Assembly: GCF_036321535.1 (NCBI RefSeq)
Contig: NC_087444.1
Span: forward strand, 65,224,001 to 65,288,000
Reading direction: 5' to 3'
Length of the DNA stretch: 64,000 nt
From: Camelus dromedarius
Lineage: Eukaryota
Below the pieces are notes generated by a model that made no database searches, had not been told where the DNA came from, and worked only from the letters and a program-made list of their open reading frames with translations. Below, piece by piece: positions 21,301 through 62,979 of this stretch. The position numbers and the translations under genes are program-made. How positions within the stretch are numbered: position 1 is the first letter of the stretch; every line of letters begins with the position of its first letter.

Positions 21301-22939
21301 ACAAAGGCCCTGGGGCAGCAAAAGCTTAGGTGCCTTCATGATGGCATCCTGAGCCCCAGGGGGTGGGACACAAGACCTAAGGAGTCAAGGGGTCCTTGTG
21401 AGCTTGATCACAGCACCTCCAGGGTTCCTTTTGGGGGGTTTTGAGCAGGCATTGGTTGTTCAAGGGTGAGCCTGCTGACGCCTGGTCTCTCCCCACAGGG
21501 ATTGCTCCATCGCGGCCACTGGCAAACGGTAAGGTGGCAGGGGCCCCAGCCAACTGAAGAGAGATCCCAAGTTTCCGCCCCAGTCCTGATGTTCTCCCTC
21601 CCCGCACAGGCCATCTGCCCGATTCCCCCACCAGCGGAGGAAGAAGAGGAGAGAGATGGATGACGGGCTTGCCGAGGGAGGGCCACAACGATCCAGTGAG
21701 TAGGCAGTGGCCCTAGAGGGCGGGCAACTGTATAGGGCTATGTGAGGATGTTCACATCCCTCCCACTCTCACCACCCTAGACACATACGTGATCAAGCTG
21801 TTTGACCGGAGCGTGGACTTGGCTCAGTTCAGTGAGAACACACCACTGTACCCGATCTGCCGAGCCTGGATGCGCAACAGCCCCACAGTGCGCGAACGGG
21901 AATGCTCACCCAGCTCACCGCTGCCCCCACTGCCTGAGGATGAGGAGGTGGGATTGGGGGGACAGTGGGTAGACAGTCACAAGGTACCCTCCCCTCAAGC
22001 TAATGGGATAGACAGGGACAGGGCTCTGAGTCCCTCAAGCGACTCCTGGATCCAGTGAGGCACACGTTTAGGAACCCTTAGGCCAAGAGAATGGTTGGAG
22101 CGCCCTAAAGCAGACAGACATGGCTATCTGGTCTGGAAGGGAGAGGGGACATGGTTCCCCCGGCAGATAGAGGTGACCTCCAAAATCAGGGTCCCCAAGA
22201 GCTGGGGGAGTGGGGAAGGTACAGGTGTAGTCACCTGGCATAGGGGAGCAGGTGGGGACCCCTTGGGCTGGGAAGGGTAGGTGGAGGTCTCTATGCTGAG
22301 CAGGGGTAACCGGGGGTCCCTGGGTTGCGACAGGAGAAAACAGAGATCCTTGGAGCAGACAGACATGACTCCTCACCATAGGTCCCTGGTGTAGGTCCCA
22401 TAGGTCTCTTTTGTCACAGGTACCCCTGGCCCTCCTCTCTGATTCTCTGGTTGGGGCCCTTGTATCCCCAGGGTTCAGAGGTCACCAATAACAAGAGTCG
22501 TGATGTGTACAAGCTGCCTCCACCCACAGCCCCTGGGCCACCTGGAGATGCCTATAGATCCCGAATTCCATCCCCACTGCAGCCTGAGACCCAGGGTACC
22601 CCCGATGACGAGGTGGGTTTGCAAGGCTGGGCTGGGGTGATGAGCATATGTTGTGGGGCTTGGGCATGGCCACTCAGCCTGACCTCTCTATCTCTGCAGC
22701 CCTCTGAGCCTGAGCCCTCACCCTCCACACTCATCTACCGAAACATGCAGCGCTGGAAACGCATCCGGCAGAGGTGAGCATCCACCATCCTGCTTGTTCC
22801 CCATGGCCTCTGCTCCAACTACTGAGTCTTCCCTCTGCCTTCCCACCCCCACTGCAGGTGGAAGGAGGCATCTCATCGGAACCAGCTTCGTTACTCAGAA
22901 AGCATGAAGATCCTACGGGAAATGTACGAGCGACAGTGA
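18355..22939 (+). CDS. LIN37: Lin-37 DREAM/MuvB core complex component (246 aa)
   Basis: Exons 18355-18388, 20871-20946, 21130-21180, 21499-21528, 21610-21695, 21781-21947, 22472-22612, 22700-22773, 22858-22939 = 741 nt. [56 protein letters not shown] at 22960-22965. Confidence 0.97.
20340..20700. mobile_element. Two MIR fragments in opposite orientation (LIN37 intron 1)
   Basis: GCCTCAGTTTCATAATCTGTAAAATGGGGATAA on the plus strand; CCCATTTTCAAGATGAGGAAACAGGCT as the minus-strand copy. Confidence 0.7.
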
Positions 22940-23979
22940 TGTTCCCCTGTCCCCCGCCAAATAAACATTCCGCTCCTCCACACTTGCTCCAGCCCATCCT
23001 TCCTGGCCTAGACATAAAGCCATTGGCACAGCTCTAGTACATTTATTAGGAGAGTGGGCCTAGGTGAGGGGATGGGGCAGTTAGGAATGAGGAGGGAGAA
23101 AGATTGCAGGGAATCAAAGAAAGTGGCTGCTTGATTGAGAAGAAGGGGAGTGGTGTGGAAGGTGGATTGCCTGGGAGATGTGGTTGGAGACTTGGGGGTC
23201 AAGAGAAAGTGACTGGAGAGGTTCTGGTTAGAGCTGGGGATGGGGGCCTGGGATATCCGTGCAGTCTGGGAGATGGGGTGGGTATCTGTACAGTTTGAGG
23301 TTGAGGGTGCTGGTTGGTCTAGGTCTACAAGGGTGAGGGTCAGAAAAGGGGTTCAGGAGTCTGGGGATGTCTGGCTGGGGTTTTAAGTCAGAAGATAGGG
23401 TTGGGGGAAGTGAAGTGTGGGGTTGGAATGAGGGGAAGGATGCCGAGTCTTCGGGACCAGGCCAGGGTGGTACAGGATAGGAGGTCTGTGCAGAGTCTGG
23501 GACATTTGAGGGAAAGGTTGGGTGCAAGGGCGGGTGGGTTATACTTAACTGGCCTAGGCCTAGGGTAGGGGGCAGGGCTGTCTACACTATGTGCTGGTGC
23601 AGGAGGGAAGACTGAAACGGGATGTGGAGATCTTTTTGCAGAGGAGTCAGAAGGAAAAAGGGAGTTTGGAGTGGGGTTATATGCCAAGTGAGATCCGTGG
23701 GGATGAGACACTGTAGGCTGAGGGATTGTGCTTGTAGGGTCTGGAAGTTAGAGGGGTGAGGGGGGTCTGAAAGCTGGAGAGGGTGTGAGAGCGAGAGTTT
23801 CAGTGGAAAGGTCTAGGTTTTCAGGGCTGAGTCTAGGTTGGAAGGGTCAAGGCGGATCCCAGATTGGGTTGGCGGGTAGTCTTGGCGCGCTCTCCGGGAC
23901 ATCTGGCTGGGTGGAGTCAGGTCGGCTTTAAAACTCGGGGCCTGAGGGGGCTCCCGGGATTCAGGCAAGGCCTGGACCT

Positions 23980-25585
23980 CTACTTGGCAGCAGCCGGCGG
24001 CGACGGAAGTGGGGCCTGGGCCGGCGCAGGTGCGGCCTGGATGGACAGGACGCCCTCAGGGGACAGCGCGGACGTCACGGCAGCAGGGTCCACGCCAGGC
24101 GGCAAGCGGTAGCGGCGGTGGAACTCGCGCGCGACGTATCCGTGCTCATCCTGGAGGGAAAGAGGCTTGAGCGGCTCTGTCAGTTCCCAGTAGATGCCCC
24201 GCCCCTCCGGCCTGCGGGTCCCGCCTACGTGTTCTGGTCCCGCCCCTCCAGCGGGCTCACCGGGCGCTCCTCGTGGCGCGCATGCACCTCCACGTGGTCA
24301 CCAACCACCTTGACGGCGATTTCCTCTGGCGAGAAGTGCTTCACATCGAGCAGCACCGAGAAATGCCCTGGGTCGGTCGGCACCTGCGCACGGCCCGATT
24401 GTCATCGGAAGGGACGAGTCTCTAGGGACCCAGCAAGACCCTTCCCCCGTCGGTTCCCCGTCCATTCTGGTGCTGCAGCTGATCCTGGCCTCCGTAACTG
24501 GATGTCCCCTTTCCTACTCGCAGCCACCGAGAATCTCTTCACCCAGAATAAATGGGATCATCCATCCCCTTGTAATCACTGGGATTCCCCTCTCACCCAG
24601 AGTGATGAGGCCCCCTTCCCCTGCAAGGTCAGGGACCTCCACCCTCACAGGGTAAGGCCTGCCCTCTCCAGCAGTGTCAACAGCCCCGTAGTCAGCCCGT
24701 CCTTCTGGACACTGACTCCTCAGCTCCCTTCCCCTCAGACCCCCTGGGGCCCTTACTGCTCCACCCCTGCCAGAAATCACCAAGATGCCTCCTCCCCCAG
24801 TCTCCGGAGTCCCCTTTCTACCCTCCCACTCGAGTCACGGGATTGCTTGAGCCCTCAGCATTTACTAGTACAACTCCCCCACTTCCGACTGGCCAGACCC
24901 TCCTTTCTCAAGTCGCAGGACCCTCCCTCCTCTCTACCTCTCCAAAAGACAGTCTCCAAACTCTCCCTCAAGAATAACAAAACATTCCGAACCCTCGGGA
25001 GTCACCGGGAGCCCTCCGCCTTTCAGAATGACTGGGCTCCCCTTTCCCCCAAATTCCCTGGGTCATCAGCCTCCCGCGGAGTTACCAAGACTCCCCTCAG
25101 AGTAACCGCCCCCACCTTATTAGTGACCCAGCCCTTCCACTCCTCTCGGAGCTGAGACCCTCCTCAGATCCACGGGGACCTCCCACCGCTTTCAGTAATC
25201 AGGTCTTCGAGAATCCATACGCAGGGAACTCCGGAAGCCCCTCTGAGTGGCCGGATTCTCCACCCCGTTCAAAGTCAAGGGACATTCCTTTACCCACCCC
25301 CGCCCACCCCCCCCGCCCCTCTCAGGAAGACCAGGGACCCCAGCCTCGGAAGTGGTCGGGTTACCGCTCCTCCCCCAGGCCTGGCACCTGGGCGGTAGGC
25401 AGCGCCACGCTGGGTGCGCGCAGGTAGTAGGGGGCCAGCGCGGCCGGGCAGAGCGCAGCCAGCTCCGCCTCCAGCAGCCCCTCTCCAAAGCGCTGGTCGA
25501 ACAGGCGCCCGGGAGCCGAAACCCCGGGCAACGGGGCCGAGACGCGGCGCAACCAAGAAGGCTGCACAGGCACCGGGATCTCCAT
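23980..25585 (-). CDS. HSPB6: Small heat shock protein beta-6 (HSP20, 163 aa)
   Basis: Exons 25585-25388, 24383-24261, 24150-23980 = 492 nt. [20 protein letters not shown], alpha-crystallin domain [15 protein letters not shown]...EFHRRYRLP. Minus-strand AATAAA at 23047-23042. Confidence 0.97.
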
Positions 25586-47900: not shown

Positions 47901-50900
47901 TGACCTTGAATGGCCCTGGGGCTGATAGCTGCCCCCTTTCCCGACTCCCCAGGCCGCTGCCTCCTCCCCAGGCCCAAGTCTCTTGCGGGCAGTGGCCCCT
48001 CCACTCGCCTGCTGACACTGGAGGAAGCCCAGGCTCGTACCCAGGGCCGGCTGGGGACACCCACCGAGCCCACAACACCCAAGACCCCAGCTTCACCTGT
48101 GGAAAGGTGAGTGGGATGCCCTGGATGGAAAGGGCCAGCCTGGAGGTCCCAGCTCCTCAGCCTGCTTCCTGTGTCTCACTCAAACCCCAGGAGGAAAGGG
48201 GAGAGAGGCGAGAAACAGCGGAAGCCTGGGGGTAGCAGCTGGAAGACCTTCTTTGCATTGGGCCGGGGCCCCAGCATCCCCCGAAAGAAGCCTCTGCCCT
48301 GGCTAGGGGGCACCCGTGCCCGACCGCAGCCTTCAGGTCAGAGGTGGAGCAGTTGGGGTGGTTGGGGAGGCGCTCTGGAGGCCCCTGTGACCTTTCTACT
48401 CTCTGCAGGCAACCGACCTGACACAGTCACACTGAGATCCGCCAAGAGTGAGGAGTCTCTGTCATCACAGGCCAGCGGGGCTGGTGAGCACTGGGTGGAC
48501 CATGCCTGTGCCCAGGTGGTGCTGGGAAGGACTGGGGCCCCAAGCTGGCCTCCAAATGATGTATTCAGAAACAGGGATCTTGAGGGTTTTTTCATTTTTA
48601 ATCTGGACCGTACATACAATGAGTTGGATAAAGCTTCACCCTTGGTCCAGGCAAAGTCCCTTCAGTCTTTTAATCATTCCTTTTGAAAAACAATTTAAAT
48701 AATATAATGAACATCCATGAACCAGAACTAAAAGAGCCCCACTACCTCACCTGTGAGCTCATCCCCCTCCCACCTGCTGCCTCTCTACCAGAAGCATCCC
48801 CTAGATTTGATGTCTTCATCCCCTTGCTTTCCGGGTTTTATCACGTACAGGTGTAGAAGTGTAGGCACCAATAACACTGTGATGTCCTAGTTGTTTTGAA
48901 ACTTTAATTGAAAGATATCATTAAAAAGGGTATTGTGCTGTAAGTGGATTCACTCACCACTACGTTACAGGCTGCCGCCCGCACTGCTGAGTGTAGCTCA
49001 GGCTGCTTCCTCTGCATCACTCTCTAGTGTTCCAGGTGTGGGGATCCCCTTGGGAGTTGCTTGTCCTTCCTCCTCCCGATGCATCTGGGGGCTCTGAGGA
49101 GCACACCCAGGAGTGGAGGTGCATACTGTACGGTATGCTCACATCCAACTCTACAAAACAAGGCCCAAGAGTTTCCCAGTGGTGGTGGCCCCAGACTGTC
49201 CTCCAGCTTCTGGGTACAAGATCCTGCTGGTCTCATGCTCACAGCCCATGGGGTTGTCACACTTCCTTCTTGTCTTTGCGTCTGGAATGCTTCTTTTCAT
49301 GGACTTGCCATTCATTTCCTTTATCACCCGTGAGTCTGAACAGCTGTCCCTGGATTCCCAGCCATTGTGACACTATCTGGGGGCGCCGGGGACGTGCCTC
49401 TTCCTGTTATTCCCCCAACTTACTGAGGGGTGCCCTGTTCTCACTGCTGTATAGGGGTATGTAACGTTCTGTCCCCTGACCCCTAACTGCCCCCCACACT
49501 GCCCTTCCAGGCCTCCAGAGGCTGCACAGGCTGCGGCGACCCCACTCCAGCAGTGATGCTTTCCCTGTGGGCCCAGCACCAGCTGGCTCCTGCGAGAGCC
49601 TGTCGTCATCTGAGTCCTCCTCTTCCTCTGCCTCCTCCTCCTCCTCGTCCTCCTCGTCCTCAGCAGCTGGGCTGGGGGCACTCTCCGGTTCCCCCTCACA
49701 CCGAACTTCAGCCTGGCTAGATGATGGTGATGAGCTGGACTTCAGCCCACCCCGCTGCCTGGAGGGGCTCCGGGGGCTTGACTTCGATCCCCTTACCTTT
49801 CGCTGCAGCAGCCCCACCCCAGGGGACCCTGCACCTCCCGCCAGCCCGGCCCCCCCGGCCCCCGCCTCTGCCTTCCCACCCAGGGCAACCCCCCAGGCTC
49901 TGTCACCCCGTGGGCCCACCAGCCCTGCCTCACCCACTGCCCTGGACATCTCAGAGCCCCTGGCTGTATCGGTGCCACCCGCTGTCTTGGAGCTGCTGGG
50001 GGCTGGGGGAACACCCGCCTCGGCCACCCCAACGCCAGCCCTCAGCCCCAGCCCAGGCCTGCGCCCCCGTCTCATCCCCCTGCTGCTACGTGGAGCTGAG
50101 GCCCAGCTGAGTGACACCTGCCAACAGGAGATTTGCAGCAAGCTGGCACTACCTGGTCCCCGTGGAGCACCAGGCCAGCAAGGTAAGTCCTGTCCAGCCC
50201 ACACCCTTACAGACCCTGAGGCTATGCCCAAGACCCCGCTGACTCCTCTTCCCATTCCTCTCCTAGGTCCTGGTATGGAGTCACCGCTGCTGCCCCCACC
50301 CCTGTCCCTCCTGCGCCCTGGGGGGGCCCCGCCCCCACCCCCCAAGAACCCAGCACGCCTCATGGCCCTGGCCCTGGCTGAGCGGGCTCAGCAGGTGGCC
50401 CAGAGACAGAGCCAACAGGAACAGGAGAGCACCCCATCTGCTCCCCACTCCCCTTTCCACCGCTCCCTGTCCCTGGAGGTGGGCACTGAACCACCTGGGA
50501 CCTCAGGGAGTGGGCTGCCTCCCCAGTCCTTAGCCCACCCAGGTGCCTGGGCTCCAGGACCCCCACCCTCCCTTCCAAGGAAACCAAGTGATGGGAGCCT
50601 GGTCAGGAGCCAGCGGCCCATGGGAACCTCAAGGAGGGGACCCAGAGGCCCTGCCCAGGTCAGTGCCCAGCTCAGGAGGGGTTGGGGGTACAGGGATGCA
50701 CCAGAGACAGCAGCCCAGTTCCTGTTTTCTGTCCCCCAACAGGTTCCTACCCCTGGCTTCTTCTCAGCCCCTCGGGAGTGCCTGCCGCCCTTCCTTGGGG
50801 TCCGCAAACCAGGCTTGTACCCCCTCAGCTCCCCATCCTTCCAGCCCAGCTCCCCAGCCCCAGTCTGGAGGAGTCCTCTAGGTCCTCCTGCACCACTTGA

Positions 50901-51525
50901 CAGGGGAGAGAACCTGTACTATGAGATTGAGGCGGGCGAGGGGTCCTTCTACTCTGGCCCCAGCCGGTCCTGGAGTCCCTTGCGCTCCATGCCCCCAGAC
51001 AGGCTCAATGCCTCCTATGGCATGCTTGGCCAATCACCGCCACTCCACAGGTCCCCCGACTTCCTGTTCAGCTACCCACCACCGCCTTCCTGCTTTCCCC
51101 ATGACCCCCTTGGCTACTCAGCCCCCCAGCACCCTGCCCGGCGCCCCACCAGACCTGAACCCCTCTATGTCAACCTAGCCCTAGGGCCCAGGGGTCCCTC
51201 ACCTGCCTCTTCCAGCTCCTCCTCCCCTCCGGCCCACCCCCGAAGCCGCTCTGATCCTGGTCCCCCAGCACCCCGCCTCCCCCAGAAACAGCGGGCCCCC
51301 TGGGGCCACCACGCCCCTCATAGGGTGCCTGGGCCCTGGGGCCTTCCGGAGCCTCTCCTGCTCTACAGGGCAGCCCCACCAGCCTATGGGAGGGGGGCTG
51401 AGCACCACCGAGGGTCCTTGTACAGGAATGGGGGGCAAGTAAGGGAGGGGGCTGGTCCCCCACCCCCCTACCCCACTCCCAGCTGGTCCCTCCACTCTGA
51501 GGGCCAGACCCGAAGCTACTGCTGA
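38991..51525 (+). CDS. ARHGAP33: Rho GTPase-activating protein 33 (PX-SH3-RhoGAP plus Pro-rich tail, 1290 aa)
   Basis: Exons 38991-38996, 41027-41124, 41206-41290, 41647-41727, 41838-41975, 42396-42488, 43071-43193, 43282-43359, 43444-43510, 43594-43653, 43745-43897, 43981-44083, 45267-45411, 45492-45574, 45659-45766, 47171-47316, 47953-48106, 48191-48336, 48409-48483, 49511-50182, 50267-51525 = 3873 nt. GIYRLSGVSSNIQRL (arginine finger), NLAIVWAPNLL, C-terminus EGQTRSYC. AATAAA at 51889-51894 and 51943-51948. Confidence 0.97.
39016..39063 (+). repeat. 3 x 16-bp tandem repeat GTCAGTCTGTCTGCGA just after the ARHGAP33 exon 1 donor
   Basis: Units at 39016-39031, 39032-39047 and 39048-39063, with one mismatch each at most. 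Confidence 0.85.
42647..42693. repeat. Compound (GC)n(GT)n alternating purine-pyrimidine tract
   Basis: 47 bp of uninterrupted RY alternation in ARHGAP33 intron 6. Confidence 0.9.
44110..44950. mobile_element. L2 LINE remnants in ARHGAP33 intron 12 (similar remnants at about 18800-19700, 33200-34100, 34850-35420, 40040-40800, 45890-47060)
   Basis: AAACATTTACTGAGC...CCAGGC...TGCTGGGGACACAG L2 3'-end signature and purine-rich L2 body. Boundaries approximate. Confidence 0.55.
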
Positions 51526-51974
51526 GCCAGAGCTGGGAGAGACCTTCTTTCTCTTCCCCCTCACTGACCTTGGCCCAACCCAGTCCCTTGTTTTGTATTC
51601 TTGAGATCCTGACCTCTACCCCAGGTTTCTAACTTTGTAACTTGCCTCTGATGTGGGTCCCTAACCTGTGACCATAGCTTCCCTACCCTTGGCTGACGGG
51701 CTCGCCCATCCTCCCACCATCCTCCATCCTGGGGGCTCTCGCACAAATCTGAGGACTAGGCTGACTCCCTGTCCTCCCTCTCCTTCCAGGAGCCCTCAGC
51801 ATGTCCTGACCTGTGCACAGGGGGTGGGGGGACAGCTCCTGCCCATCTCCCCTCACATACCCCACTAAACCATCTGACAAAATTAATGAATAAAAATGGT
51901 GAAAACGTGGCTGCTAGTGTCATGCTGGGGCCAGGCTCAGTGAATAAAGAGGCAGTGACAGGTGGGTCACTTTA

Positions 51975-54900
51975 TCATTTTATCATTTCAGCAGGTGCCA
52001 AGTGCGGAGTCCCTCCTGGGAGGCTCTGAGGAGCGATATCTGCCGAGGCGGGGCCATGGATGCCCTGACAATTTGTGTCAGGAGTGGGATTGAGCTTGGG
52101 TCTGTCTTCAAGTTGGTATCCACCTTTCATCTCTGCTATGATCTCCTCCAGCAGATCCATCCTGGGGGTGGGGAGACAGTTGGGTAGGGGTGGACTGAGG
52201 GTTACCTCAGGGATAAAGAAGGGGCCTGGGACCCTCCCACCAGGGCCCCATTTCTCACTTCTGCAGGCTGGAGAAGAGACTTCCTCTGATTAGCTCAGAG
52301 CTGGGATCCTGCAGGAGAAGAAGACTGGAGCTGCCACCAGGTGGCCACAGAGCTCAGGATGGGCCTAGGGGGTGGGGGCAGGGCCTGGGCTCAGGGTCTT
52401 CTGCTTCACCTGCCCTCGTGGCTTTCCCTGCCAGCAGCCTCTAGGATGTGGGAAGCCTCCCTGTAGGTCAGTAGACAGGGGGTGGGCTCATGGGGCTGGG
52501 GGGTCCAGCAGGGTGGCCCTGTGTGTGTGCTGCCTCAGCCCCTGCAGGGCTTGGATCTTGGCTGAGAACTTCCTCTCAAACTGCTCCTCAGAACTCAGAA
52601 GGCTGAGTCCTGAAGGCTGGAGTGCAGGGCAGGGCCCTGGGGGAAGCAGGGTCAGTCGGGGGTCACAGATCAGTGAGGGGACAGTTGGGGATGACAGGGG
52701 CTCCCTGGTCAGAGAAGAGGTAGCCAGGGAAATTGGGGTTGGTGACGACTAGGGAGAGGGGTCACAGGTAAGTGAATGGACAGTCATGCGGGGCTCAGGG
52801 TATCCATACTGTGGATCTGGGCTCCAGGCAGCGGTGCAGGCTGACCCTGGCCGTGGGGCTGTGGCCTGGGCAGAGGCTAGGGTTGGGACTTGGGCTGCTG
52901 CCTAGAGTCAGGCTGCTGCCCGAATTCCAGGCTGCACCACTCTGGACTCTGCTGTGGCCCATGACCTGCAAAGAGCAATGACAGAGAGCTGGCGTGGGTG
53001 GCCCAGGTGCCCTGCAGCTCCCTTGATCCTCCACATGCCTGTCCTGGCTCCTACCTGGGGTGGGGAGGGGCCTAGGGACATCACGGGGGGCACAGGCCTG
53101 GGTGTAGTGTTGGCTCTGGGAGCCACATCAGGGTACAGTGTCTCTGGGGGGGACAGACCAGTTGGTTGGAATGGGGCAGGGGCACAGCTGAGCTGTGCTC
53201 AGCACCTGCTACCATCCCCCCTTGCCCTCTAACCTGGTGGGAAACCCTGGCGTGAAGGGCACAGTGTGGTCCAGTCCACCGGGGAGCTCACCTCGGGAGC
53301 CGAGTCCTGTGGGGAGGAGACTGGGTGTGGGACGTGGGCCTGCCTGACGTTCCATGGCTGCCACCCTCCTCTGCCTGCCAGTCCCATACCTGGGCCATGG
53401 CCTCCCGCAGCAGGTATCGTGTACTCTGCAGGCTGCCCCGGCGGTCAGCAGGCCCTAGGCCCAGCCCAGCCCGAACCAGGGCCTGGTAGGGGGCTGGCAC
53501 CAGCGGGTCCAGGGCCGGGCTCTCACCTGCCTCCAGTTTGGCCTTCACCTCAGGCCCCTCTCGTCCAGCCCAGGGCAGCTCTCCTGTAAGGAAGCATGAC
53601 TGGAGGACCGAAACGGGTGGGGGCTGCAGTGGGGTGGGGAGCAGGGTCACTCACTGACCAGTGAAGACCTCCTGGGCCAGGATGCAGAAGCTGTAGAGGT
53701 CTGAGGTGGCGGCAGGCATGTCACCACAGATGAGCTCAAGTGGCAGCCATGGATACAGTTCGGGAGGTGGGGGCAGTCCTGGGCCTGGGCCTCCCCAGGG
53801 GTAGCCCTGCTGTGGCCTGTGGAGGCCGAGGCACCTGGTGAGCCAGTGGCCTCTGGGCAGGGACACAGGCAGGCAAGTGAGGCAGGCACTCACCTGGGCC
53901 TCAGCCAGCGTTGATGCAGCGGGCGCCCGTGTTCCAGGCTGCCTACCTTGGCCAGGCCTGGCCGCACCAGCTGCACGGCGTGGGAGCTGAGGCCGCCGTG
54001 AGCACGCCAGCGGGCCTGCAGGAACAGCAGGGCCTCCAGCACCTGCAGCAGCAGGCGGCCGGGCAGCAGGCCTGGCACAGGGCGGGGCCCCCCACGGGGC
54101 CTCACCTCTCTAGGTCCCTGTGGGTGCAGCACCACATGCAGGGAGCCCAGCCACACGGGTTCGAAGAGAAGGCACAGCCCTGACAGGTCCGCCGAGGGGC
54201 TCAATGCCATCAGCAGCAACAGGCTGGGGTGGTGCAGGGTGCTGGGCAGGAGGAGAGCAGGCCACTCACGAGGGGGCCCTAACCCACACGGGGTGGGGGC
54301 TGCTCTTGGGCAGAGACTGACGCCAGGGACTGACGATCCGCCTCAGCCACGAGACAGAAGAGAAACCGAGACCCAGGCTCACACAGCCTGGCGGTGGCAG
54401 AGGCAGCAACCAGTTTACACCCTGTCCCTGGTACCCCTCCCTACACCCACTTCCTCTCTGAGGCCTACAAGGCCGCACACTGAACTGGGTGCCCACCTTC
54501 CAGCGGTGGGGTAGTCACTCCAGTAGGAGGGCTCCATGCCAAGTACTGGCCCACAGGGGAAGCCTGTAAACAAGGCCACTGCCACAGTCCCTGGTCTTCT
54601 GTTTATGACACACTTGAGTCAGGAGGGCAGGCAGGAGACTGGCCTGTGGGCCTGGGCTGGCCCAGAGGGAAGGCTTGGGGGGACATACCTGCAGTGCTGA
54701 AGGTCAGCCAGCAGCACGTCAGGCTGGGTTCCAGGTGCCTTCAGCTGCCGCACGGTCACAGGGTGGCCCCTCCACAGGAGGCTGGAAAAATTGGGAGGGG
54801 GAGTGTAGGTCTGAGCCAGGGGGTGTCCCTGTGAGGGGAGCAGGAGAGCTGGACTCTCCCCAGAGCTCTGCTGGACAGCCAGGCAGGGGTGTGGGAGGGG

Positions 54901-57900
54901 GCAATCTCTCACTTGGCCATGAGGGTGTGGGAGCTGCTCTCATAGGTGCGGTCGGGCTCGCCCTGGGCTGGCAGTAGCTCCTTGGGATCTGCGAGGGGTA
55001 TGCCTGTTACCAGCCCCAGTGGCCACAGGCTGCTCAGCTGGGGATGGGGAGCGAGACCATGAGGCACAAAGAGGACAGGTGGTCCTTGCTCCCCTCAACA
55101 TCCCCCTCTTACCTGGCCGAACCCTGAGGCTGGAATTTGGGGGGATCTCCTGATCTGCTCCGGCCATGGTGCCCTGGGGTAAAGGGCAGTCCGAGAGTAA
55201 GTCCAGAGTAGCTGGGAGCAGTGGGTGGGCAGGCTTCAGGGTGTGGACTGTTACCTGTCCGCTTGCACCAGCCGCAGAAAGAACAGGGAACCACCACACA
55301 GGCTGTGTCCAGAGCCGGCCTGCAACTGGTCCACGGATGCAGTGGGTGCCAACTCACTGCCGTGTACTAGTGCTGATATGTTGGCCCGGCAGAGCTGTAA
55401 CAGCTCCCGCATCTGGATGGGGTGCGTGTGGGGTGAGGCAGGGTGGGAGCGCTAGCCCTGATACCCTCACCCCACCCTGGCTGTGGCTCACCTCACAGCT
55501 CTGCTTGGCACCACCCTGCTCTGCCCAGTCCCATGGGGTGTGACCCTGCTGGTCATGCAGACGCAGGTCGCCCCCTGCCTGCAGCAGGTGCAGCATAACC
55601 AGGCTGCGGCCGGAGAAGGCACCCGCATGCACGGGTGTGCTGCCATCGAGGCAGCGGCTACAACAGAACAATGAGAGCAGGAATGGACTAGGAAGGGGAC
55701 AGGACGGGGGACAAGAGGTGGCAGGATGGGAGCACTGAGGGATAAAGGGGTCACCATGATCATGGGAGGTGGATATCAGGATGGGGGTCACTTGGGGACA
55801 CAGTGGAGTCTTTGAGAGGATGAGAGATCGCTGGGAGCATGGGGCACCGGAAGAATGGGAATAGACACTGGAGGACAAGAAGGGGTTAACTGAGTGAACA
55901 AAGTGGGGGGTGGTCACAGGGATGGGAGGGGCATCAGGGGATGGAAGGGGGTCTGAGGAAATGAGGCCTCTGGGGAAGACAGCCCTGGCTCTCAGGCTCT
56001 CTGGGGCTCAGACTCAGGGCCCTGGGAGTGTGGGGGCATCACCACCTGTCCACTCACTGGTTGGGGTTGGCACCAAAGGCCAGCAGGAGCCGCACGGCAG
56101 AGCTGTGGCCCAGCAGCGCAGAGAGGAAGAGCGCCGTCTGCCCAGCAGAGTTCTCACCATCTACCTGGACAACTGAGGGGCAGCGAGGCTTAGGATTGTC
56201 TCTGCCCCTTACTCTGGGGGCAGAGGTCCTGGAAACACCTTTCCCAGTTCCCAGCCCCCACAGTCCCTGCTTGACTGGGTGATCCTTGACACCAGGTTCC
56301 GTCTCTATGTCCTAAAACCCCCGCCTTCCAGTTTCAGCCTCAGAATCCATCTCAACACAGTGCCCACCACTAAGTCCACAGAACTGGAACAAGGTGACAT
56401 CCACCTGCTTTGCCAATATCTATCCCCGATCCCAGAGCTGTCAAAGTCACACGAAGGTACCCAGGGGCCAGGAGGAAGTGAACTTCATGGGCACTTGGGC
56501 TTACAGGAGCCTCGTGCACTGTCTAGGGCAGGCAGGCCCCACCCAGCTCTAATTCAGTGTACGTACAGGTCCCATGTGGCTAGCATCAAATTCAAGATCA
56601 GCAAACTCTCTGAATTTTTTTTTAATGGAGGTACTGGGGATTGAATCCAGGACTTTGTGCATGCTAGGCATGCGCTCTACCACTGAGCCATACTAACCCC
56701 TCCACCAAACTCTGGATTTTATCAGGAAATCTCTCAAGTTTATTTCTGAACACTGCACAAGGCAGTAAACTCCTCTGGATTCAGCCTCCATGCCCTTGCC
56801 AATCCCCTTGCCTCCATCATCCTGCTCAGATCCCCCCTCCCAATCCCTCATCTCCACAATCATCATGCCCCAAGTCCTGTTTCTTTGCATCCGTCATCCC
56901 TGAGTTCTTATTTCAGACCAGATCCCATATACCCAGGGAGGGCAAGTGCATGGTGTCTTTGTCCTTGCATTCCTATGTAATTGGGAGACACAGCTAATCA
57001 GTCATGCACTTGGACCAACCCAGCTTGGTCTCTGCCATAAACATCCCTCCAAATACAGTACTTCAGGAACCTCTGAAAATCACATTTACTATATCCTATT
57101 TTACTCAGTAGCCTACCATCTTTTGCAATGGCATCCTAACTGGTTTTCTACATTTGTCTTACCCTGCAGAGGGAGCATCTTAAAATACAAATCATTTCAG
57201 GATATAGACAATCTTTACAATAATCACTTCATTTCATGTATAGATAATCGTATACAAGTTATTCCAAAAAAGAAAAATAGAAAAAGAGGGCAAGGCTCAT
57301 TTTATGAGGCTAGTGTGACCTTAACTCCAAAACCAGATGAGAGTTTTCAGAATGAGAAGTGAAATTATACATCAATTCCGTTTATGATCATATATGCAAA
57401 GCCCCTAAAAAGAAAAGCAGTAACCCAACTGATTTATTCCCAGATTGCAAGGATGATTTAACAAAAGAAAATCTGTCAACATAACAAAACACATTCAAGG
57501 ATTAAAGGATAAAAATCATGTTTAATTAAGTAGATACAGAAAAGGCATTTGATAAAATTCAATACCTACTTACGATAAAAAAAAAAACCCTCAGAAAACT
57601 AAGAATAAATGGGAACTTCCTTACTTCATAAAAATTATAAACCAATACCCAAGAGCAAGCATAGTACCTAATGCAGAAACACAGACTCATCTCTCTAATA
57701 ACAACAACAAAGAAAGAAATGTCCATTGACAACTAAGTTTGGGAGTTCTGGCCAACAACTTATGACAGGAAAAAGCAATTAGAATTTAAAGACTGAATAG
57801 CTGAGACCAAACTGTCACCATCTGCTGATAACAAAAAAGTGAAAGGATCAACATACAATTACAACTGTTAAGCAAGTTCAGAAAGTGACCAGATACACAA

Positions 57901-58595
57901 CCAACTTACATAAATCAATGAAAAACAGAAATTGTAAACTGGATAGTGTTAATTTCCTGCCCACAACTCCAATGGTCTCCAATTACACACAGAACAAAAT
58001 CCAACAAAATGCACACCCCTTCCAAAACCGTCAGCTTCAGTTCTCTCCCCAAGTCCCTTGCTCCCTGCTGTTACATATACCCAGTTTGTTTTGACTTCAA
58101 GGCCTTTGTGATGGTTATTCCATCTTTCTGAAGTGCGCTTCCCCTAGGTTTTTGCATGACTGGCTCTTAAACTGTTGGACTCAAATATCACCTTATCCAA
58201 AAAGCTATCCTTTCCAGTGTATCTACCTCATCTTAAATTCCCATAATAGATTACATTCACAATGACCCAGAAGGTCATGTTCACCCGTAAATCCCCATCA
58301 CAAACAACAGAGCCTTAGCACACACACCTATTGTGTCAACACAGTTTTGTCAACACAACTGTTGACTGGCTAACTGAAGTCCCACCCTCCATACCGCCCC
58401 TTGATCTTGCCGCCCCCCACCCCGAACCCCTTGCCCGGTAGTTCCAGTAGCCAGACTCTCACCTCTCTGCAGAAGCCGGGTGAGACCCCAGCTTGGGCCC
58501 CCAGCCACAGCAAGGCGATGCAGACGGCCCACCTGGCCTTCTGGATTCCTAACGGAGCCCAGCTCCACGGGTAAGTGAGAACGCAGCGAAGACAT
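51975..58595 (-). CDS. Unnamed TEX14-like ankyrin-repeat pseudokinase (802 codons end to end; one in-frame TGA at codon 698)
   Basis: Phase-consistent GT-AG exons: 58595-58463, 56172-56058, 55657-55492, 55412-55255, 55173-55113, 55037-54913, 54781-54689, 54241-53894, 53816-53659, 53583-53390, 53306-53234, 53143-53055, 52965-52846, 52748-52410, 52308-52259, 52161-51975. Ankyrin peptides [29 protein letters not shown] and [16 protein letters not shown]...GGDLRLHD. Kinase-fold remnants [33 protein letters not shown]. These align with TEX14 peptides as I recall them. The five most C-terminal exons are less certain. Confidence 0.85.
56615..56703 (-). mobile_element. tRNA-Ala-derived SINE (camelid vic-1-like) in an intron of the TEX14-like gene
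   Basis: Same tRNA-like body (GGCTCAGTGGTAGAGCGCATGCCTAGCATGCAC...GGATTCAATCCCCAGTACCTCC) plus A tail; degenerate CAAACTCT duplication on both sides. Confidence 0.85.
57230..57910 (+). mobile_element. Old degraded LINE-1 ORF2 (reverse transcriptase) fragment
   Basis: A-rich sequence with a [10 protein letters not shown]-like RT motif at about 57533-57562 and many stops and indels. Confidence 0.75.
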
Positions 58596-59447
58596 CTGTG
58601 GGCTCCAGATTCAGTCAGCTTCTGGCCAGGGATCAGCTAGGGGTTCTCATGAGGGCAGGAGGAAGTGATGGACTAGGTCTCTGGGGACAATAAAGACAGA
58701 CTGGTGGGGAGTCCTGGGGGACAGTCTGAGAAAGGAAGGTGATTCAGGAGGGGTCTTATTTGGAGAGAAACGTCTGAATGAGAAAAAAAGGTGGGCTCTG
58801 AGAGAGCTACAAGGTCAGGGATCTAAGGGAGTCTGAGAATGAAGAGGATCTAAGGAAATCTGAGGGCTAGGTGCTCTATCTGGGAGATGGGGTCTGTGTA
58901 AGGGCTAAAGGGACAGGATTTGGGCCAAGGAAAGGAGTCTGAGGCCTTAGGAAGAGGGTCTGAAGACTACCTAGTGGCTGGAGGAAGAGGGGCCTGAGGG
59001 TTAGGACCAGAGAGGGTGTGGGGTCTACGGGCTGTGAGAGGGAAGTGTCCAAGGGAGGACGACAGTCTGAGGGCAGGGTCTTCCGGCTGCTGCGGAAAGA
59101 GCCCGGGGGAGGGATCTGAGGGCAGTGGCTGGGGTCTGTGAGCTGGGAGAGGGTAGGAGGGTTGGGGGCGTGGGCTGAGGTTTAGGGAAGCATCTATGTG
59201 CTGCGGAGGGGTCTACGGGCTAGGAGAGGGGACAGAAGTAAGGAAGGGGTCTGAGGGCTGTACCTGTGGGCAGCAGAGAGGGCGAGCTGAATGTTGACAG
59301 GGCCTGATAAACACGTGGGTTCTGAGGGCCCAGGAGCCGAAGGAAGGGAGGAGTATGAGGGAGGAGGCGCCTGAAGGCGGGGTCTTCGCGCTGGGGAAGG
59401 GGTCTGGTGGAGAGCTGAGGGCCCAGTCCACACGGCTTTACACCTAC

Positions 59448-59640
59448 CGTTGGCCTCCTACAGTGATCACCACGTGACCACTACATGACGCCACGCACTA
59501 CTTCTGGCGGTTTGGGCGGGAATCCTTAGCGCATGCGCATCAGTGGTCACCTGCCACCTTTGCACTTGCGCAGTAACCTTTTTCCGTGAGCGCTGCTCTT
59601 CCGGTCTCGAGGTGATCCGGTAGAAGAGACAGCAACGTCC
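59448..59640 (-). promoter_or_regulatory. Putative promoter and non-coding first exon of the TEX14-like gene
   Basis: Small CpG cluster with GCGCATGCGCA (NRF1 consensus, 59529-59539), CACGTG (59471-59476), a GC box and CTTCCGG (ETS). Minus-strand donor ACG|GTAGGT after 59448 would splice to CACAG|ATG at 58595. Confidence 0.6.
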
Positions 59641-61071
59641 ACTGCAGAACTGTTGGCTGCACCCTGCATGTTACCACCTTCTTGTTTGGGATGGTGGGTC
59701 CTTCCTGATCCCTGTCCTTGGCGTCTTCCCACGCTCCTCACCCACCCACACGGGCTTTCTCTCCCTTTTTCCCTGCCCCAGGCTCTCTTCTTTGCCCCAC
59801 ATCTGTGGCCTCACAGTGCCCTGGACACCCCCCCTTGGATGTTCCCTGGGAGCCTCACACCCACCAGGTCCCACACGAGCCTTAGAATCTCCCCCAAACT
59901 GCATTTCCCCCCAGAACCCCATCTCAGAGTTGTCCCCACTGCCCCCTCTTTAAGCCAGAGCCCTGACCTTGCCCTGAATGTCTCCCTCAAATCCAGCCTG
60001 TCGGCTCCATGGCCCTTCCACTCAGCCTCCTGATTGTTCTTTCCACCAGCCCCCTCCTCCCTTCCCCACAGCCTGCCCAGCTCCACCCAGCTGCCAGGAT
60101 TCCCTACCGAAGCTTCCTCTGGGCTCTCACACAGAGAGCTCAGGGTCCATCCCCCACATGGCAGCCAGCGGACTCTTCCTAAAGTGCAACCTGACTCTGT
60201 CCCTCCTCCACTTCAAACTCTCCTGGCACCCCAGTGCCCTTGGGACAGAGTCCAGGCTCTGCAGTGTGGCATCTAAGACGACATCATCTGCCCCTGCTAC
60301 CCTCCATCCTTGTCTCCCCACTCCGCAGTCTGTTTTCTGCTTCTCTGTTTATACACATGCCCTTCCCTTTGAATGCTCTTTTCAGTATTCACTTGGTTCT
60401 TCTTATGAATTCTCTGGGAAGCCCTCTTGGTCACCAGGTGTCTCCTCTGGCCTCCCACAGCCTCCAGGCTTTCCCCAACATTGCCCTGATATTCCACGTG
60501 GGCTCCCCCCATCACAGCCCTGTCCACCCTGGCTGTCACCGTCTGAAAATGGGCCTGTCTCCCCCTACTGGACCAAGAGCCCTATGAGTCTGGGCCTGGG
60601 GTTGTCTTTACCTCTGCTGTGTCCTCAGCATTGTTCACCTTAAAAGGGGCTTCAGTAAATGCTTATTAAATAATAAAGTGGTTTGGCTCTTCTCTCTGTC
60701 CCTCCCTGGAGGTGTGACCTTAGCCTTGCCTCTTGACTTCAGTGCCTCAGTGTCTGCTCTTTAATAAACTATGCTCTTCACATGGAGTGAAAGAAGTTCT
60801 CACATCAGCCACTAACTGGCTGAACAGAGCTGACCACGGGCCCTTCTCAGGACAGGCTACCTCAGGGCTCAGGGGGAGGCTTCACTAGTCTTTGATTAAC
60901 ACCCTTGCCATCTTCTAGGGTCAGCTAAAGCTCTCTCTTGAGCTGCAGAGCCCCCTAGCTTGGGCTGGCCAAGGTGGAGGTTAGCCCTTCCCCACGAAGA
61001 TGGCTTCGGTGCAAGACAGCCCCCTGGGCAGCAACTCAGGACCTTTATTGACCATGTGATCCCTGGGGGTG

Positions 61072-62793
61072 CTAATGGGATGCCCTCAGGCCCCGCCCCA
61101 GCAGCCTCCGCCGAAGTTCTTGGCTGAGCAGCTCCTGTTCCCTGCGGGCACCCTGCAGCACACTTCGGTTCTCCTGGGCCCTCCGGATCAGGTAAGGGAT
61201 CACCTCCTCCAGGGAGCCATAGGGGATGGACTTGTACACGGCATAGCCGGCCTGCCCTGGAGGGAGAGTATTGGCAGGGTGAGGGCTCATGTTTGAGGAG
61301 AGGCGCCCCCAGGCCCTACATGGAACAAAGACTTCCATTTCTGAGAAAATGGCAGACTAGATGTATTGGACAAAATTTCCCACTGAAAAAAAACTAAAAA
61401 TCTTGGAGTAGACATTTTTAAAAATCTTCTCCAAGTTATTAAAATGCTGCCAAGTGAATAAGGAATTTACTAATCCAAGAATTAAGAGAAAATGGGGACC
61501 GAGAGAAGGAAGGGATACACTAGAGTCATTTCTACCCTGAAGATAAAATTGAGCTGCTATTCGATGACTTCAAAGTTGAGGGGGTACAGGAATGAAGGCC
61601 CAAAGCCTGACCAGAGTGAGAATTATAAAGGAGAATTTCCCCAAATTAAGTTGGAACCCAAACATCAAGACCTTCAGAGTAAGAGTTAACAAGAAGTCAA
61701 CACTCCCACCTTCCCCTACTCCCAGAGAATGGCCTTGACCGTAAGTAGAGCAAGGAAGAAAACAGAAAAATCCATCTCTGAGAGCCTGTGGCCATGGGTT
61801 AGTCCCCTAACACATTTGCAGCCCAAATTTGCATCTCTGGGGTGTCTCAAGAAACCTCAAGCAGTGAATTTAGGGTGCAATGGTTTTGTACCCCTTAGCA
61901 CCTGGCAGAAGGAAACATACATCTTCTGGTCTCAGGCCCCGAGGAGCAAGATAGTAAAGATCTCACAGGAAACAAGATACCATGACCAAAGACCGACAAA
62001 AACAACAAACTGCAGACACAGAGATACAGGCCTGCAAGGCCTTCAGATATGGGACAGATCTATCTGGAAGGGTCTGGCAGCTGGGCCGGCTGCAGTCTCT
62101 GCATGGGAGCCTGGCCAGGCGTTGTCTGGGAATGGGAGAGAGGGTCTGGCTGGGAGAGAGTGAGGCCTGGGGCTGGGGGTGGGGGTGGGGGGGATGGATC
62201 ATTCACATACCTAGTGCCAAGGAGACGTGGTCACACATCCCCAGAAGTTGTCCAAAACAAACGGGCCCATCCAGAGGAATGCCAAGCTCCCATATGCTAC
62301 AGAAAAAGCCACATCATCAATCCAGACAGTGACCGGATCTGGAGCTGGAAATCAGCCACTTTGTACTCACATGGCTGTTCCAGGCATTCAAATACTGACA
62401 TACTTCCAAACTCACTGATAATAACCACTGCCCTGGGCCCCCTGAAAGCTCCCCAGTGAGTCTCAGCTCCCTCCCTGGAAGCCTCAGACCTCCCAGGCCC
62501 CAGCAAATAAGGAGAAATGCCTTGTTCAGCTGGGGCCTATGGGACCTACAGGTGTAGCAGGGGTTAAGTAATTTGAATATTCTCCCAAGGTCCCCTTTGA
62601 ACCTACCGGCCCACACTGCTCCTCCCTTTGTTCCACGTCCACTACGCTTTGGGCACCTATTTCCCATTCCCCCACTTCATACCGCTTGGTTGCCTGGCGA
62701 ACAGATTCCTCATTGTGGGAGGCCACCATGAGGTGGCACGTGGGGCCACGATGGGACACATGGGTCAGCATCAGCTCCAGACAGCGGCTGTAA
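61072..62793 (-). CDS. PRODH2: Hydroxyproline dehydrogenase (proline dehydrogenase 2), last three exons; 5' part outside the window
   Basis: Exons 62793-62683, 62296-62211, 61256-61072. YSRCLELML...HLMVASHNEES, VCFGQLLGMCDHVS, VYKSIPYGSLEEVIPYLIRRAQEN. Minus-strand AATAAA at 61049-61044. Confidence 0.95.
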
Positions 62794-62979
62794 CTGGAGG
62801 GAGATGTTCCATTCAGCTTATAGCACCTGGCACGTGAGGGTTAGGCACCAAGGACCAGGAGTTTCTGTCCTTGGGAAGTGGGGTGCCTAAGAGCAGGGAC
62901 CCTAGAGTCAGGAAGTGCTGGCACCCCACCTTCCTCAGCTGTGAGGGACATCCCCCCTCTGGGCCTTTTTCTTCTCTCT

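What the first reader, a model, noticed from the sequence alone, without database searches (positions are those of the whole stretch)
51975..58595. Unnamed TEX14 paralogue: a second ankyrin-pseudokinase gene between ARHGAP33 and PRODH2
Seen: 16 minus-strand GT-AG exons join in frame into ANK repeats ([12 protein letters not shown]...[22 protein letters not shown]...GGDLRLHD), a linker ([22 protein letters not shown]), a kinase fold, a Pro/Ser-rich tail and a short helical end ([13 protein letters not shown]). Established, recalled from memory: TEX14 reads [61 protein letters not shown]14 has its ATG at the start of coding exon 1 and 115- and 166-nt ANK exons; the same lengths and phases (1,2,0,2,0,2,2) occur here. 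This points to an ancient genomic duplication and not a retrocopy. TEX14 is usually treated as the single factor that stabilises germ-cell intercellular bridges. As I recall, the syntenic human interval holds only the lncRNA LINC01529, so this may be a germline gene lost in humans. Inference: an uncharacterised partner or modulator of germ-cell bridge or midbody biology. It may already have an automated 'TEX14-like' label in some genomes.
Basis: partly seen in the sequence, partly recalled or inferred. Interest (0 to 1): 0.92.

Follow-up and report, generated by a model that had tools for sequence, protein, structure and literature searches.

The report
Camel TEX14-like pseudokinase gene (Arhgap33os)
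This is a real, intact gene for an ankyrin-repeat 'dead kinase', an ancient sister of the germ-cell bridge protein TEX14; genome databases already list it (as 'TEX14-like', mouse Arhgap33os), its function has never been studied, and it lacks the motif by which TEX14 works.

Summary
On the minus strand, 15 constitutive AG/GT exons (58595 to 51975) join in frame into a 701-aa protein. It has three ankyrin repeats, a disordered linker, a kinase fold lacking all three catalytic residues, a Pro/Ser-rich tail and a short C-terminal helix.

The gene lies between PRODH2 and ARHGAP33. It is 99% identical to alpaca 'inactive serine/threonine-protein kinase TEX14-like isoform X1', so the window is camelid.

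The gene is not unnamed. NCBI labels it 'TEX14-like' in dozens of mammals, marsupials, turtles, squamates, a newt, a caecilian, a lungfish and a ray. Its mouse symbol is Arhgap33os (formerly Gm1082).

A rooted tree and 9 to 11 shared intron positions out of 12 show a genomic duplication older than the shark/bony-vertebrate split. It is not a retrocopy.

dN/dS is about 0.3 overall and 0.14 to 0.27 in the kinase domain, so the gene is under purifying selection.

None of 84 TEX14L-type proteins has TEX14's CEP55-binding GPPX3Y motif, against 119 of 163 TEX14-type proteins. The proposed bridge or midbody role is therefore unsupported.

No catarrhine protein was found, which is consistent with loss in humans but does not prove it.

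Verdict: already annotated, functionally uncharacterised, moderately interesting.

The parts
58463..58595 (-). Coding exon 1 (133 nt, ATG at 58595, phase 1 after)
   Evidence: Same length as in wombat, hyena and deer mouse.
56058..56172 (-). Exon 2 (115 nt), ANK repeat; same length as TEX14 exon 2
   Evidence: Pfam Ank E=9.8e-6 on the exon alone. 115 nt in ostrich TEX14 and in turtle TEX14L.
55492..55657 (-). Exon 3 (166 nt), ANK repeat; same length as TEX14 exon 3
55255..55412 (-). Exon 4 (158 nt), end of the ANK cap helix and disordered linker
   Evidence: pLDDT below 50 for residues 156-223
55113..55173 (-). Exon 5 (61 nt), linker ending in the GFGQ remnant of the glycine loop
54913..55037 (-). 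Exon 6 (125 nt), start of the kinase N-lobe
54689..54781 (-). Exon 7 (93 nt), beta3 strand VTVRQL (Arg in place of the catalytic Lys)
53894..54241 (-). Exon 8 (348 nt), kinase core: hinge, HGG in place of HRD, GSLE in place of DFG. It is a fusion of two ancestral exons (intron lost in placentals).
53659..53816 (-). Exon 9 (158 nt), activation segment, PLE and SDLYSF
   Evidence: Pfam PK_Tyr_Ser-Thr E=0.015 on the exon alone
53390..53583 (-). Exon 10 (194 nt), kinase C-lobe (ELPWAG to the end of the domain)
   Evidence: pLDDT 88-96
53234..53306 (-). Exon 11 (73 nt), start of the disordered tail
53055..53143 (-). Exon 12 (89 nt), tail; with exon 11 it encodes the placental motif G-[SFP]-PPETLY
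52810..52965 (-). Exon 13 (156 nt), Ser/Pro-rich tail
52488..52616 (-). Alternative terminal exon encoding [18 protein letters not shown], then a stop codon. It is ancestral coding sequence, part of the main ORF in wombat, turtle and ray TEX14L.
   Evidence: (dromedary model P0213)
52410..52460 (-).
   Evidence: Present in alpaca isoform X4, P0202; AG/GT flanks
52259..52308 (-). Exon 14 (50 nt)
   Evidence: tblastn with carnivore C-termini
51975..52161 (-). Exon 15, coding part (187 nt including the stop). It carries the conserved C-terminal helix [16 protein letters not shown].
   Evidence: (helix 643-652)
49567..51525 (+). Neighbour: last coding exon of ARHGAP33, convergent; its stop lies 450 bp from the TEX14L stop
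   Evidence: RhoGAP/SH3 gene in the same position in wombat and loris.
62212..62795 (-). Neighbour: 3' exons of PRODH2, upstream on the same strand
   Evidence: tblastn with PRODH2-TEX14L fusion models P0175 and P0183. A Pro_dh gene lies upstream in wombat, hyena, loris and deer mouse.

Best explanation
The locus is the Camelus orthologue of a gene already annotated as 'inactive serine/threonine-protein kinase TEX14-like' (mouse Arhgap33os, formerly Gm1082). It is one of two gnathostome daughters of a single ancestral ANK-pseudokinase gene; the other daughter is TEX14. It encodes a 701-aa non-catalytic protein with three ankyrin repeats plus a cap, a disordered linker, a kinase fold, a disordered Pro/Ser-rich tail and a conserved C-terminal amphipathic helix. 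The kinase fold has lost the beta3 Lys (now Arg), the HRD Asp (HGG) and the DFG Asp (GSLE). Shown here: gene structure, orthology, paralogy, age, purifying selection, the dead catalytic site, and the absence of TEX14's CEP55-binding motif. Inferred: it acts as a scaffold. The ANK plus pseudokinase module is the most constrained part and the part shared with TEX14, so it would bind a partner of the kind TEX14's N-terminal module binds. The lineage-specific C-terminal helix would dock a different partner. It would not block abscission by competing for CEP55 as TEX14 does.
For: - Gene model: 15 AG/GT exons give a 701-aa ORF.
- Orthology: 99% identity to alpaca XP 'TEX14-like isoform X1' (P0154), and the N-terminus is identical to Camelus ferus P0219. 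Named orthologues exist across mammals, marsupials, reptiles, amphibians, lungfish and ray, including 'Rho GTPase activating protein 33, opposite strand' and 'gene model 1082-like'.
- Synteny: the order PRODH2, TEX14L, then convergent ARHGAP33 holds in wombat, hyena, loris, deer mouse and the window.
- Tree: in the careful IQ-TREE rooted on molluscs, lamprey falls outside, the TEX14 clade has support 99/97 and the TEX14L clade 91/92. The ray Mobula has one gene in each clade.
- Introns: of the 12 N-terminal introns of ostrich TEX14, 9 fall in the same alignment column (within one) with the same phase as in the window. Two more have the same phase within 8 columns of gap-rich sequence. The twelfth is present in turtle and wombat TEX14L and lost in placentals.
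- Selection: NG86 dN/dS is 0.29-0.36 over the whole gene among placentals, 0.14-0.27 in the kinase domain and 0.19-0.30 in the ANK domain.
- Domains: Pfam Ank_2 at 34.6 bits and PK_Tyr_Ser-Thr at 31.9 bits, both above the curated cut-offs.
- Structure: AF2 gives confident ANK and kinase domains, a disordered linker and tail, and a helix at 643-652. Foldseek gives TM-scores of 0.74-0.81, normalised to the target, to SYK and ACK1 kinase domains.
- Catalytic motifs were read from the alignment.
- GPPX3Y: 0 of 84 Arg-type proteins have it, against 119 of 163 Lys-type proteins.
- The C-terminal helix motif is not found in any TEX14.
Against: Nothing contradicts the identity. The functional part is inference only: I had no expression, localisation or interaction data. 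The mammalian kinase domain is strongly diverged. Pfam scores 32 bits for alpaca, 73 for turtle and ray TEX14L, and 91 for camel TEX14, and the mammalian stem branch is long at 0.88. The partner of the mammalian protein may therefore have changed. The TEX14L clade has support 91/92, short of the 95 threshold. Tail dN/dS is 0.4-0.85, so much of the tail is weakly constrained.
Confidence: 0.85

Rival explanations
1. One reading: a germline partner or modulator of TEX14 at intercellular bridges or midbodies, lost in humans.
For: It is the closest paralogue of TEX14 and shares the ANK plus pseudokinase module. No catarrhine orthologue is annotated, whereas lemurs, loris and New World monkeys have models. 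A 2026 review of intercellular bridges mentions no paralogue, so the question is open. Placentals have a PPExLY motif just after the kinase domain that loosely resembles GPPX3Y.
Against: No TEX14L sequence has GPPX3Y. The placental PPExLY motif has an extra residue between G and PP, is changed in mouse (SLPEHLY), and is absent in squirrel, hedgehog, marsupials and reptiles. The protein lacks the roughly 900-residue C-terminal half of TEX14. No germline expression evidence was found. The mouse gene appears only in differential-expression lists from brain, brain microvessels, colon and muscle. Gnomon builds PRODH2-TEX14L read-through models in several species. From general knowledge, PRODH2 is a liver and kidney gene, so these models hint at somatic transcription.
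Confidence: 0.2
2. A decaying gene or non-coding 'opposite strand' transcript whose ORF survives by chance in this species.
For: The mouse name ends in 'os', and one paper lists the gene among non-coding transcripts. Many truncated or frame-shifted isoform models exist, for example in cattle. The kinase domain is degenerate.
Against: The same 15-exon ORF is intact in camel, hyena and deer mouse, and a related structure is intact in wombat and turtle. dN/dS is well below 1, especially in the folded domains. The folded domains are predicted with confidence.
Confidence: 0.05
3. A retrocopy of TEX14, or a member of another ANK-kinase family (ANKK1, RIPK4, ILK).
For: None found.
Against: It has fifteen exons with introns at TEX14 positions. 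All 109 hits of the kinase-core exon are TEX14L, TEX14 or invertebrate TEX14-like proteins wherever names were available. The ANK repeats are N-terminal to the kinase, as in TEX14.
Confidence: 0.01

Closest known systems
Mouse Arhgap33os (formerly Gm1082); NCBI 'inactive serine/threonine-protein kinase TEX14-like' (e.g. alpaca P0154, 701 aa)
   Same: Same gene (orthologue). It has the same position between PRODH2 and ARHGAP33, the same 15-exon structure in deer mouse and hyena, and 99% (alpaca) to about 70% (mouse) protein identity.
   Different: Nothing essential. The camel copy differs only by ordinary substitutions. The gene has no experimental characterisation under any of these names.
TEX14 (testis-expressed 14, intercellular bridge forming factor)
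   Same: Same architecture: N-terminal ankyrin repeats followed by a kinase-like domain. Both lack the HRD and DFG aspartates. Residues 9-549 are about 34% identical. Exons 2 and 3 have identical lengths (115 and 166 nt), and 9 to 11 of 12 intron positions and phases are shared. The two form sister clades in the tree.
   Different: TEX14 is about 1,450-1,500 aa, while TEX14L is about 650-750 aa in mammals. TEX14 keeps the beta3 Lys (VTVK), while TEX14L has Arg (VTVR). TEX14 carries the CEP55-binding GPPX3Y near residues 790-810; TEX14L does not. TEX14 lies next to a Rad51-family gene, whereas TEX14L lies between PRODH2 and ARHGAP33. TEX14L has its own C-terminal helix motif.
SgK424, the second member of the NKF5 kinase family alongside SgK307/TEX14 in the 2002 human kinome catalogue (recalled from memory, not verified)
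   Same: If my recollection is right, this is the human remnant of the same gene, which would mean the paralogy was recognised two decades ago.
   Different: I could not confirm it. Full-text searches for SgK424 and for NKF5 with TEX14 found nothing. Treat it as a lead only.
ANKK1 / RIPK4 (ankyrin-repeat kinases)
   Same: They combine ankyrin repeats and a kinase domain.
   Different: In those proteins the ANK repeats are C-terminal and the kinase is catalytically competent (general knowledge). None appeared among the 109 hits of the kinase-core exon wherever names were obtained.

Membership tests
TEX14 / TEX14-like ANK-pseudokinase family | N-terminal ankyrin repeats | tested here: met
   Pfam Ank_2 at 34.6 bits (cut-off 27.3) on alpaca P0154. 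Ank E=9.8e-6 on window exon 2 alone. AF2 shows helix pairs at 21-45, 53-76 and 91-109 plus a cap at 124-154.
TEX14 / TEX14-like ANK-pseudokinase family | Kinase fold following the repeats | tested here: met
   Pfam PK_Tyr_Ser-Thr at 31.9 bits (cut-off 23.1). Foldseek TM-scores of 0.74-0.81 to SYK and ACK1 kinase domains.
TEX14 / TEX14-like ANK-pseudokinase family | Groups with family members in a tree, to the exclusion of other kinases | tested here: met
   All named hits of the kinase-core exon belong to TEX14L, TEX14 or invertebrate TEX14-like proteins. The window sits inside the mammalian TEX14L clade with support 100/100.
TEX14 / TEX14-like ANK-pseudokinase family | Shared exon-intron structure | tested here: met
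   Phases are 1,2,0,2,0,2,2 then 2,1,0,1. The 115- and 166-nt exons are identical in length to those of ostrich TEX14.
TEX14 proper (orthologue of the bridge-forming factor) | GPPX3Y motif that binds the CEP55 EABR domain | tested here: not met
   0 of 84 Arg-type (TEX14L-type) proteins have GPPxxxY, against 119 of 163 Lys-type (TEX14) proteins. The window protein has only GFPPETLY. The motif's role is taken from PMC13216642.
TEX14 proper (orthologue of the bridge-forming factor) | Falls in the TEX14 clade and has TEX14 synteny | tested here: not met
   It falls in the sister clade. Its neighbours are PRODH2 and ARHGAP33, not the Rad51-family gene seen beside ostrich TEX14.
TEX14 proper (orthologue of the bridge-forming factor) | Localises to germ-cell intercellular bridges and is required for them | not testable with these tools
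   No expression or localisation data were available.
Catalytically active protein kinase | beta3 Lys, HRD Asp, DFG Asp | tested here: not met
   The window protein reads VTVR, AHGG and KVGSLE at the aligned positions. The Arg is found throughout the TEX14L clade.
Processed retrocopy | Intronless copy of the parent mRNA | tested here: not met
   15 exons with canonical splice sites at the parental positions.

The most novel reading that the evidence does not exclude
TEX14L is a functional counterpart of TEX14. It would use the shared ANK-pseudokinase module to reach the same bridge, midbody or kinetochore partners but, lacking the CEP55 clamp, would tune or oppose bridge stabilisation. Under this reading, its apparent absence from catarrhines, birds, frogs and teleosts would mark lineages in which germ-cell cyst dynamics rely on TEX14 alone.
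Probability: 0.1. Interest if true: 0.7.

Novelty: already known. Interest (0 to 1): 0.3.

Why it matters
As a discovery it is not new. The gene is in RefSeq for camelids and many other vertebrates, and it has a mouse symbol.

What this analysis adds:
- The gene is one of a pair of gnathostome paralogues older than the shark/bony-vertebrate split.
- It is under purifying selection in mammals.
- It has lost all three catalytic residues.
- It lacks the CEP55-binding motif that defines TEX14's mechanism.
- It has its own conserved C-terminal helix.
- It lost one intron in placentals.

The gene is misleadingly named in mouse. The 'opposite strand' name makes it look like a lncRNA, and some papers treat it as one.

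Current reviews of germ-cell bridges do not mention any TEX14 paralogue. The gene would therefore be a reasonable, cheap knockout target in mouse. If it really is absent in humans and other catarrhines, that would limit its medical relevance but make it an interesting case of lineage-specific loss.

Tried and rejected
- Pfam on single exons gave only weak ANK and kinase signals, and nothing for the 115-aa kinase-core exon. Full-length orthologues were needed.
- Literature searches for 'TEX14-like', 'SgK424', 'NKF5' with 'TEX14', and 'TEX14L' found nothing. The 'Gm1082' word-start hits were other gene models (Gm10823, Gm10824), and the whole-word hits were unrelated. The 'Arhgap33os' hits are gene lists only.
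- The PDB sequence search with the full-length protein was swamped by designed ankyrin proteins and said nothing about the kinase part. The fold search did.
- The look-up of encoding contigs had no record for camel TEX14, lion TEX14L or Eulemur TEX14L. I used ostrich TEX14 and hyena, loris, deer mouse, wombat and turtle TEX14L instead.
- The first exon of the deer-mouse model could not be mapped from its annotated N-terminal extension, so I mapped from the homologous Met.
- Classifying proteins by BLAST score against camel references put non-mammalian TEX14L with TEX14. I replaced this with classification by the beta3 residue.
- I considered and rejected a functional CEP55 motif in G-[SFP]-PPETLY, because it is not conserved outside some placentals.
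Full report
**Observation.**
I read the minus strand of 51500-59200 and defined exons by eye and by frame. Thirteen exons from the ATG at 58595 down to 52810 all have AG/GT boundaries. They join in frame to 623 codons.

Carnivore orthologue C-termini placed two more exons, at 52308-52259 and 52161-51975.

Exon lengths are 133,115,166,158,61,125,93,348,158,194,73,89,156,50,187.

The extra one is an optional in-frame 51-nt exon at 52460-52410, which alpaca isoform X4 uses. No assembly gap lies in the gene.

**Neighbours.**
A 652-codon + strand ORF ending at 51525 is the proline-rich last exon of ARHGAP33. An SH3/RhoGAP gene occupies the same convergent position in wombat and loris.

PRODH2 3' exons lie on the minus strand at 62795-62212. 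A Pro_dh gene lies upstream of the orthologue in wombat, hyena, loris and deer mouse.

**Identity.**
I searched 1.84 billion representative proteins with the kinase-core exon (115 aa). This gave 109 hits. The best hits carry the NCBI name 'inactive serine/threonine-protein kinase TEX14-like' in cattle, banteng, hyena, meerkat, snow leopard, wombat, sea turtles and rattlesnake.

A full-length search with the meerkat protein listed the same name in about a hundred more mammals, marsupials and reptiles. It also listed 'Rho GTPase activating protein 33, opposite strand' (Mus spicilegus) and 'gene model 1082 (NCBI)-like' (Bos taurus). These correspond to the mouse symbols Arhgap33os and Gm1082.

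The stitched window protein has the same length (701 aa) as alpaca isoform X1. It is 99% identical to it over the N-terminal 537 aligned columns. Its N-terminus is identical to a Camelus ferus model. The window is therefore from a camel, and the gene is already annotated in camelids.

In the searchable literature the gene appears only in differential-expression lists, once among non-coding RNAs. No paper uses 'TEX14-like', 'TEX14L' or 'SgK424'. A 2026 review of male germline bridges mentions no TEX14 paralogue.

**Paralogy and age.**
I built a careful maximum-likelihood tree of the ANK plus kinase region.
- Lamprey falls outside the two gnathostome clades.
- The TEX14 clade has support 99/97.
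- The TEX14L clade has support 91/92 (the quick 85-row tree agrees).

The devil ray Mobula hypostoma has one gene in each clade. A newt, a caecilian and a lungfish have TEX14L as well. The duplication therefore predates the split of cartilaginous and bony vertebrates.

I saw no bird, frog, crocodilian or ray-finned fish in the TEX14L clade. My sampling was not exhaustive.

**Gene structure.**
I mapped ostrich TEX14 exactly onto its locus. Its first twelve exons are 136,115,166,137,82,131,114,124,179,152,191,151 nt, with phases 1,2,0,2,0,2,2,0,2,1,0,1.

Comparing these introns with the window's in a protein alignment:
- Nine of the twelve introns fall in the same column (within one) and phase as the window's.
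- Two more have the same phase within 7-8 columns of gap-rich sequence.
- The twelfth is absent from the window, splitting what is one 348-nt exon here.

That twelfth intron is present in turtle TEX14L (124 and 182 nt) and in wombat TEX14L (127 and 194 nt). It is absent in camel, hyena, loris and deer mouse. It was therefore lost in the placental lineage, at least in Boreoeutheria.

This rules out a retrocopy.

**Selection.**
I extracted the exact CDS of hyena, loris, deer mouse and wombat and aligned the codons with the window. Nei-Gojobori dN/dS values are:

| Region | dN/dS |
|---|---|
| Whole gene, among placentals | 0.29-0.36 |
| Whole gene, camel vs wombat | 0.24 |
| Kinase domain | 0.14-0.27 |
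| ANK domain | 0.17-0.30 |
| Linker | 0.23-0.51 |
| Tail, exons 11-13 | 0.38-0.68 |
| Last two exons | 0.7-0.85 in the full-length placental comparisons |

The folded domains are clearly under purifying selection. The tail is only weakly constrained.

**Protein.**
Pfam finds Ank_2 and PK_Tyr_Ser-Thr above the curated thresholds in the alpaca orthologue. The kinase score of 32 bits is far below that of turtle or ray TEX14L (73 bits) and camel TEX14 (91 bits). The mammalian stem branch is long, at 0.88.

AlphaFold2, run with a 50-sequence alignment, gave:
- a confident ANK domain (residues 10-155);
- a disordered linker (156-223);
- a kinase fold (224-522) whose C-lobe has pLDDT above 90;
- a disordered tail with one short helix at 643-652.

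Foldseek matched the kinase part to SYK, ACK1, EGFR and JAK1 kinase domains, with TM-scores of 0.65-0.81 normalised to the target.

In the alignment the motifs read as follows:

| Motif | Window / placental TEX14L | Turtle TEX14L | TEX14 |
|---|---|---|---|
| Glycine loop | GFGQ | – | – |
| beta3 Lys | Arg in every TEX14L | Arg | Lys |
| HRD | HGG | HRA | HRS |
| DFG | GSLE | – | CNLE or TNLE |

The PLE and SDLYSF motifs are kept. This is a pseudokinase, more degenerate than TEX14.

**Comparison with TEX14's mechanism.**
TEX14 stabilises bridges by binding CEP55 through a GPPX3Y motif, outcompeting ALIX and TSG101 (PMC13216642).

In my sequence set, 119 of 163 Lys-type (TEX14) proteins of at least 600 aa contain GPPxxxY. 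It typically lies at residues 790-810. None of the 84 Arg-type proteins contains it; these are TEX14L, lamprey and some unnamed sequences.

Some placentals have G-[SFP]-PPETLY just after the kinase domain. This has an extra residue in the motif, differs in mouse, and is absent in squirrel, hedgehog, marsupials and reptiles.

TEX14L instead has a conserved C-terminal motif, LQ-x-[ML]-DLL-[EQ]-E-I-I-x-E-L-x-G, found from squamates and turtles to mammals. A profile of this motif finds nothing in TEX14.

I conclude that the protein most likely acts as a non-catalytic scaffold through its ANK-pseudokinase module and C-terminal helix. It does not act as a CEP55 competitor. The scaffold mechanism is inference and nothing here tests it.

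**Human loss.**
A search seeded with the squirrel-monkey protein returned lemur, loris and New World monkey models, but no catarrhine protein. The TEX14 search returned chimpanzee, gorilla, orangutan, gibbon and baboon TEX14.

The squirrel-monkey models together cover camel residues 46-534 at 77-82% identity.

This is consistent with loss or non-annotation in catarrhines. I could not examine those genomes. The literature only confirms that LINC01529 is regarded as non-coding.

**Verdict.**
The evolutionary interpretation is supported. 'Unnamed' is wrong, and the functional inference is unsupported. The gene is already known to databases and unknown to experiment.

Noticed in passing
window 52488-52616 (minus): An alternative terminal exon encodes [18 protein letters not shown] followed by a stop. 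The same segment (SLE-x-LE-x-RF-xx-GIQALQ) is part of the main ORF in wombat, turtle and ray TEX14L, and aligns with a helical segment of TEX14. In placentals it is used only in some models (dromedary P0213, rabbit P0186, loris P0172). It is partly degraded in hyena and not detectable in deer mouse.
   Followed up: partly
window 53894-54241 (exon 8) versus L002 12556-13346 and L003 15165-15745: One intron in the kinase core was lost in placentals. It is present in ostrich TEX14, turtle TEX14L and wombat TEX14L, and absent in camel, hyena, loris and deer mouse.
   Followed up: yes
window 56626-56697 (minus), intron 1: Rfam reports a tRNA match (35.1 bits) followed by an A-run. It looks like a tRNA-derived SINE inside the 2.3-kb first intron, not a tRNA gene.
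   Followed up: partly
window 58464-62795 (minus), and proteins P0170, P0175, P0183, P0187, P0203, P0214, P0383: NCBI models named 'hydroxyproline dehydrogenase / proline dehydrogenase 2' fuse PRODH2 exons to TEX14L exons. This occurs in pig, bear, mouse lemur, gerbil, fruit bat, squirrel monkey and desman. The pig model joins the PRODH2 exon ending at 62212 to TEX14L exon 2. This suggests read-through transcription from PRODH2.
   Followed up: partly
window 51525-51975: The stop codons of the convergent genes ARHGAP33 (+) and TEX14L (-) are only 450 bp apart, so their 3' UTRs probably overlap. This probably explains the mouse name 'Arhgap33 opposite strand'. I saw no canonical AATAAA just downstream of the TEX14L stop.
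   Followed up: no
L003 (green turtle TEX14L locus): The turtle TEX14L does not sit between PRODH2 and ARHGAP33. Within 10 kb its neighbours are a V-set Ig gene and an ADP-ribosylglycohydrolase gene, and an EF-hand gene is called inside the gene's range. The PRODH2/ARHGAP33 synteny is therefore documented only in therian mammals.
   Followed up: no
proteins P0075, P0398, P0399, P0401 (lamprey) and the P0048 cluster: Lamprey 'TEX14' and some unnamed long homologues have Arg, not Lys, at the beta3 position and no GPPxxxY. The Lys and the CEP55 motif may be innovations of the gnathostome TEX14 clade, not losses in TEX14L.
   Followed up: no
window 18000-24000: This stretch has strong positive GC skew (0.24) in two 2-kb bins. 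It lies outside the finding and was not examined.
   Followed up: no
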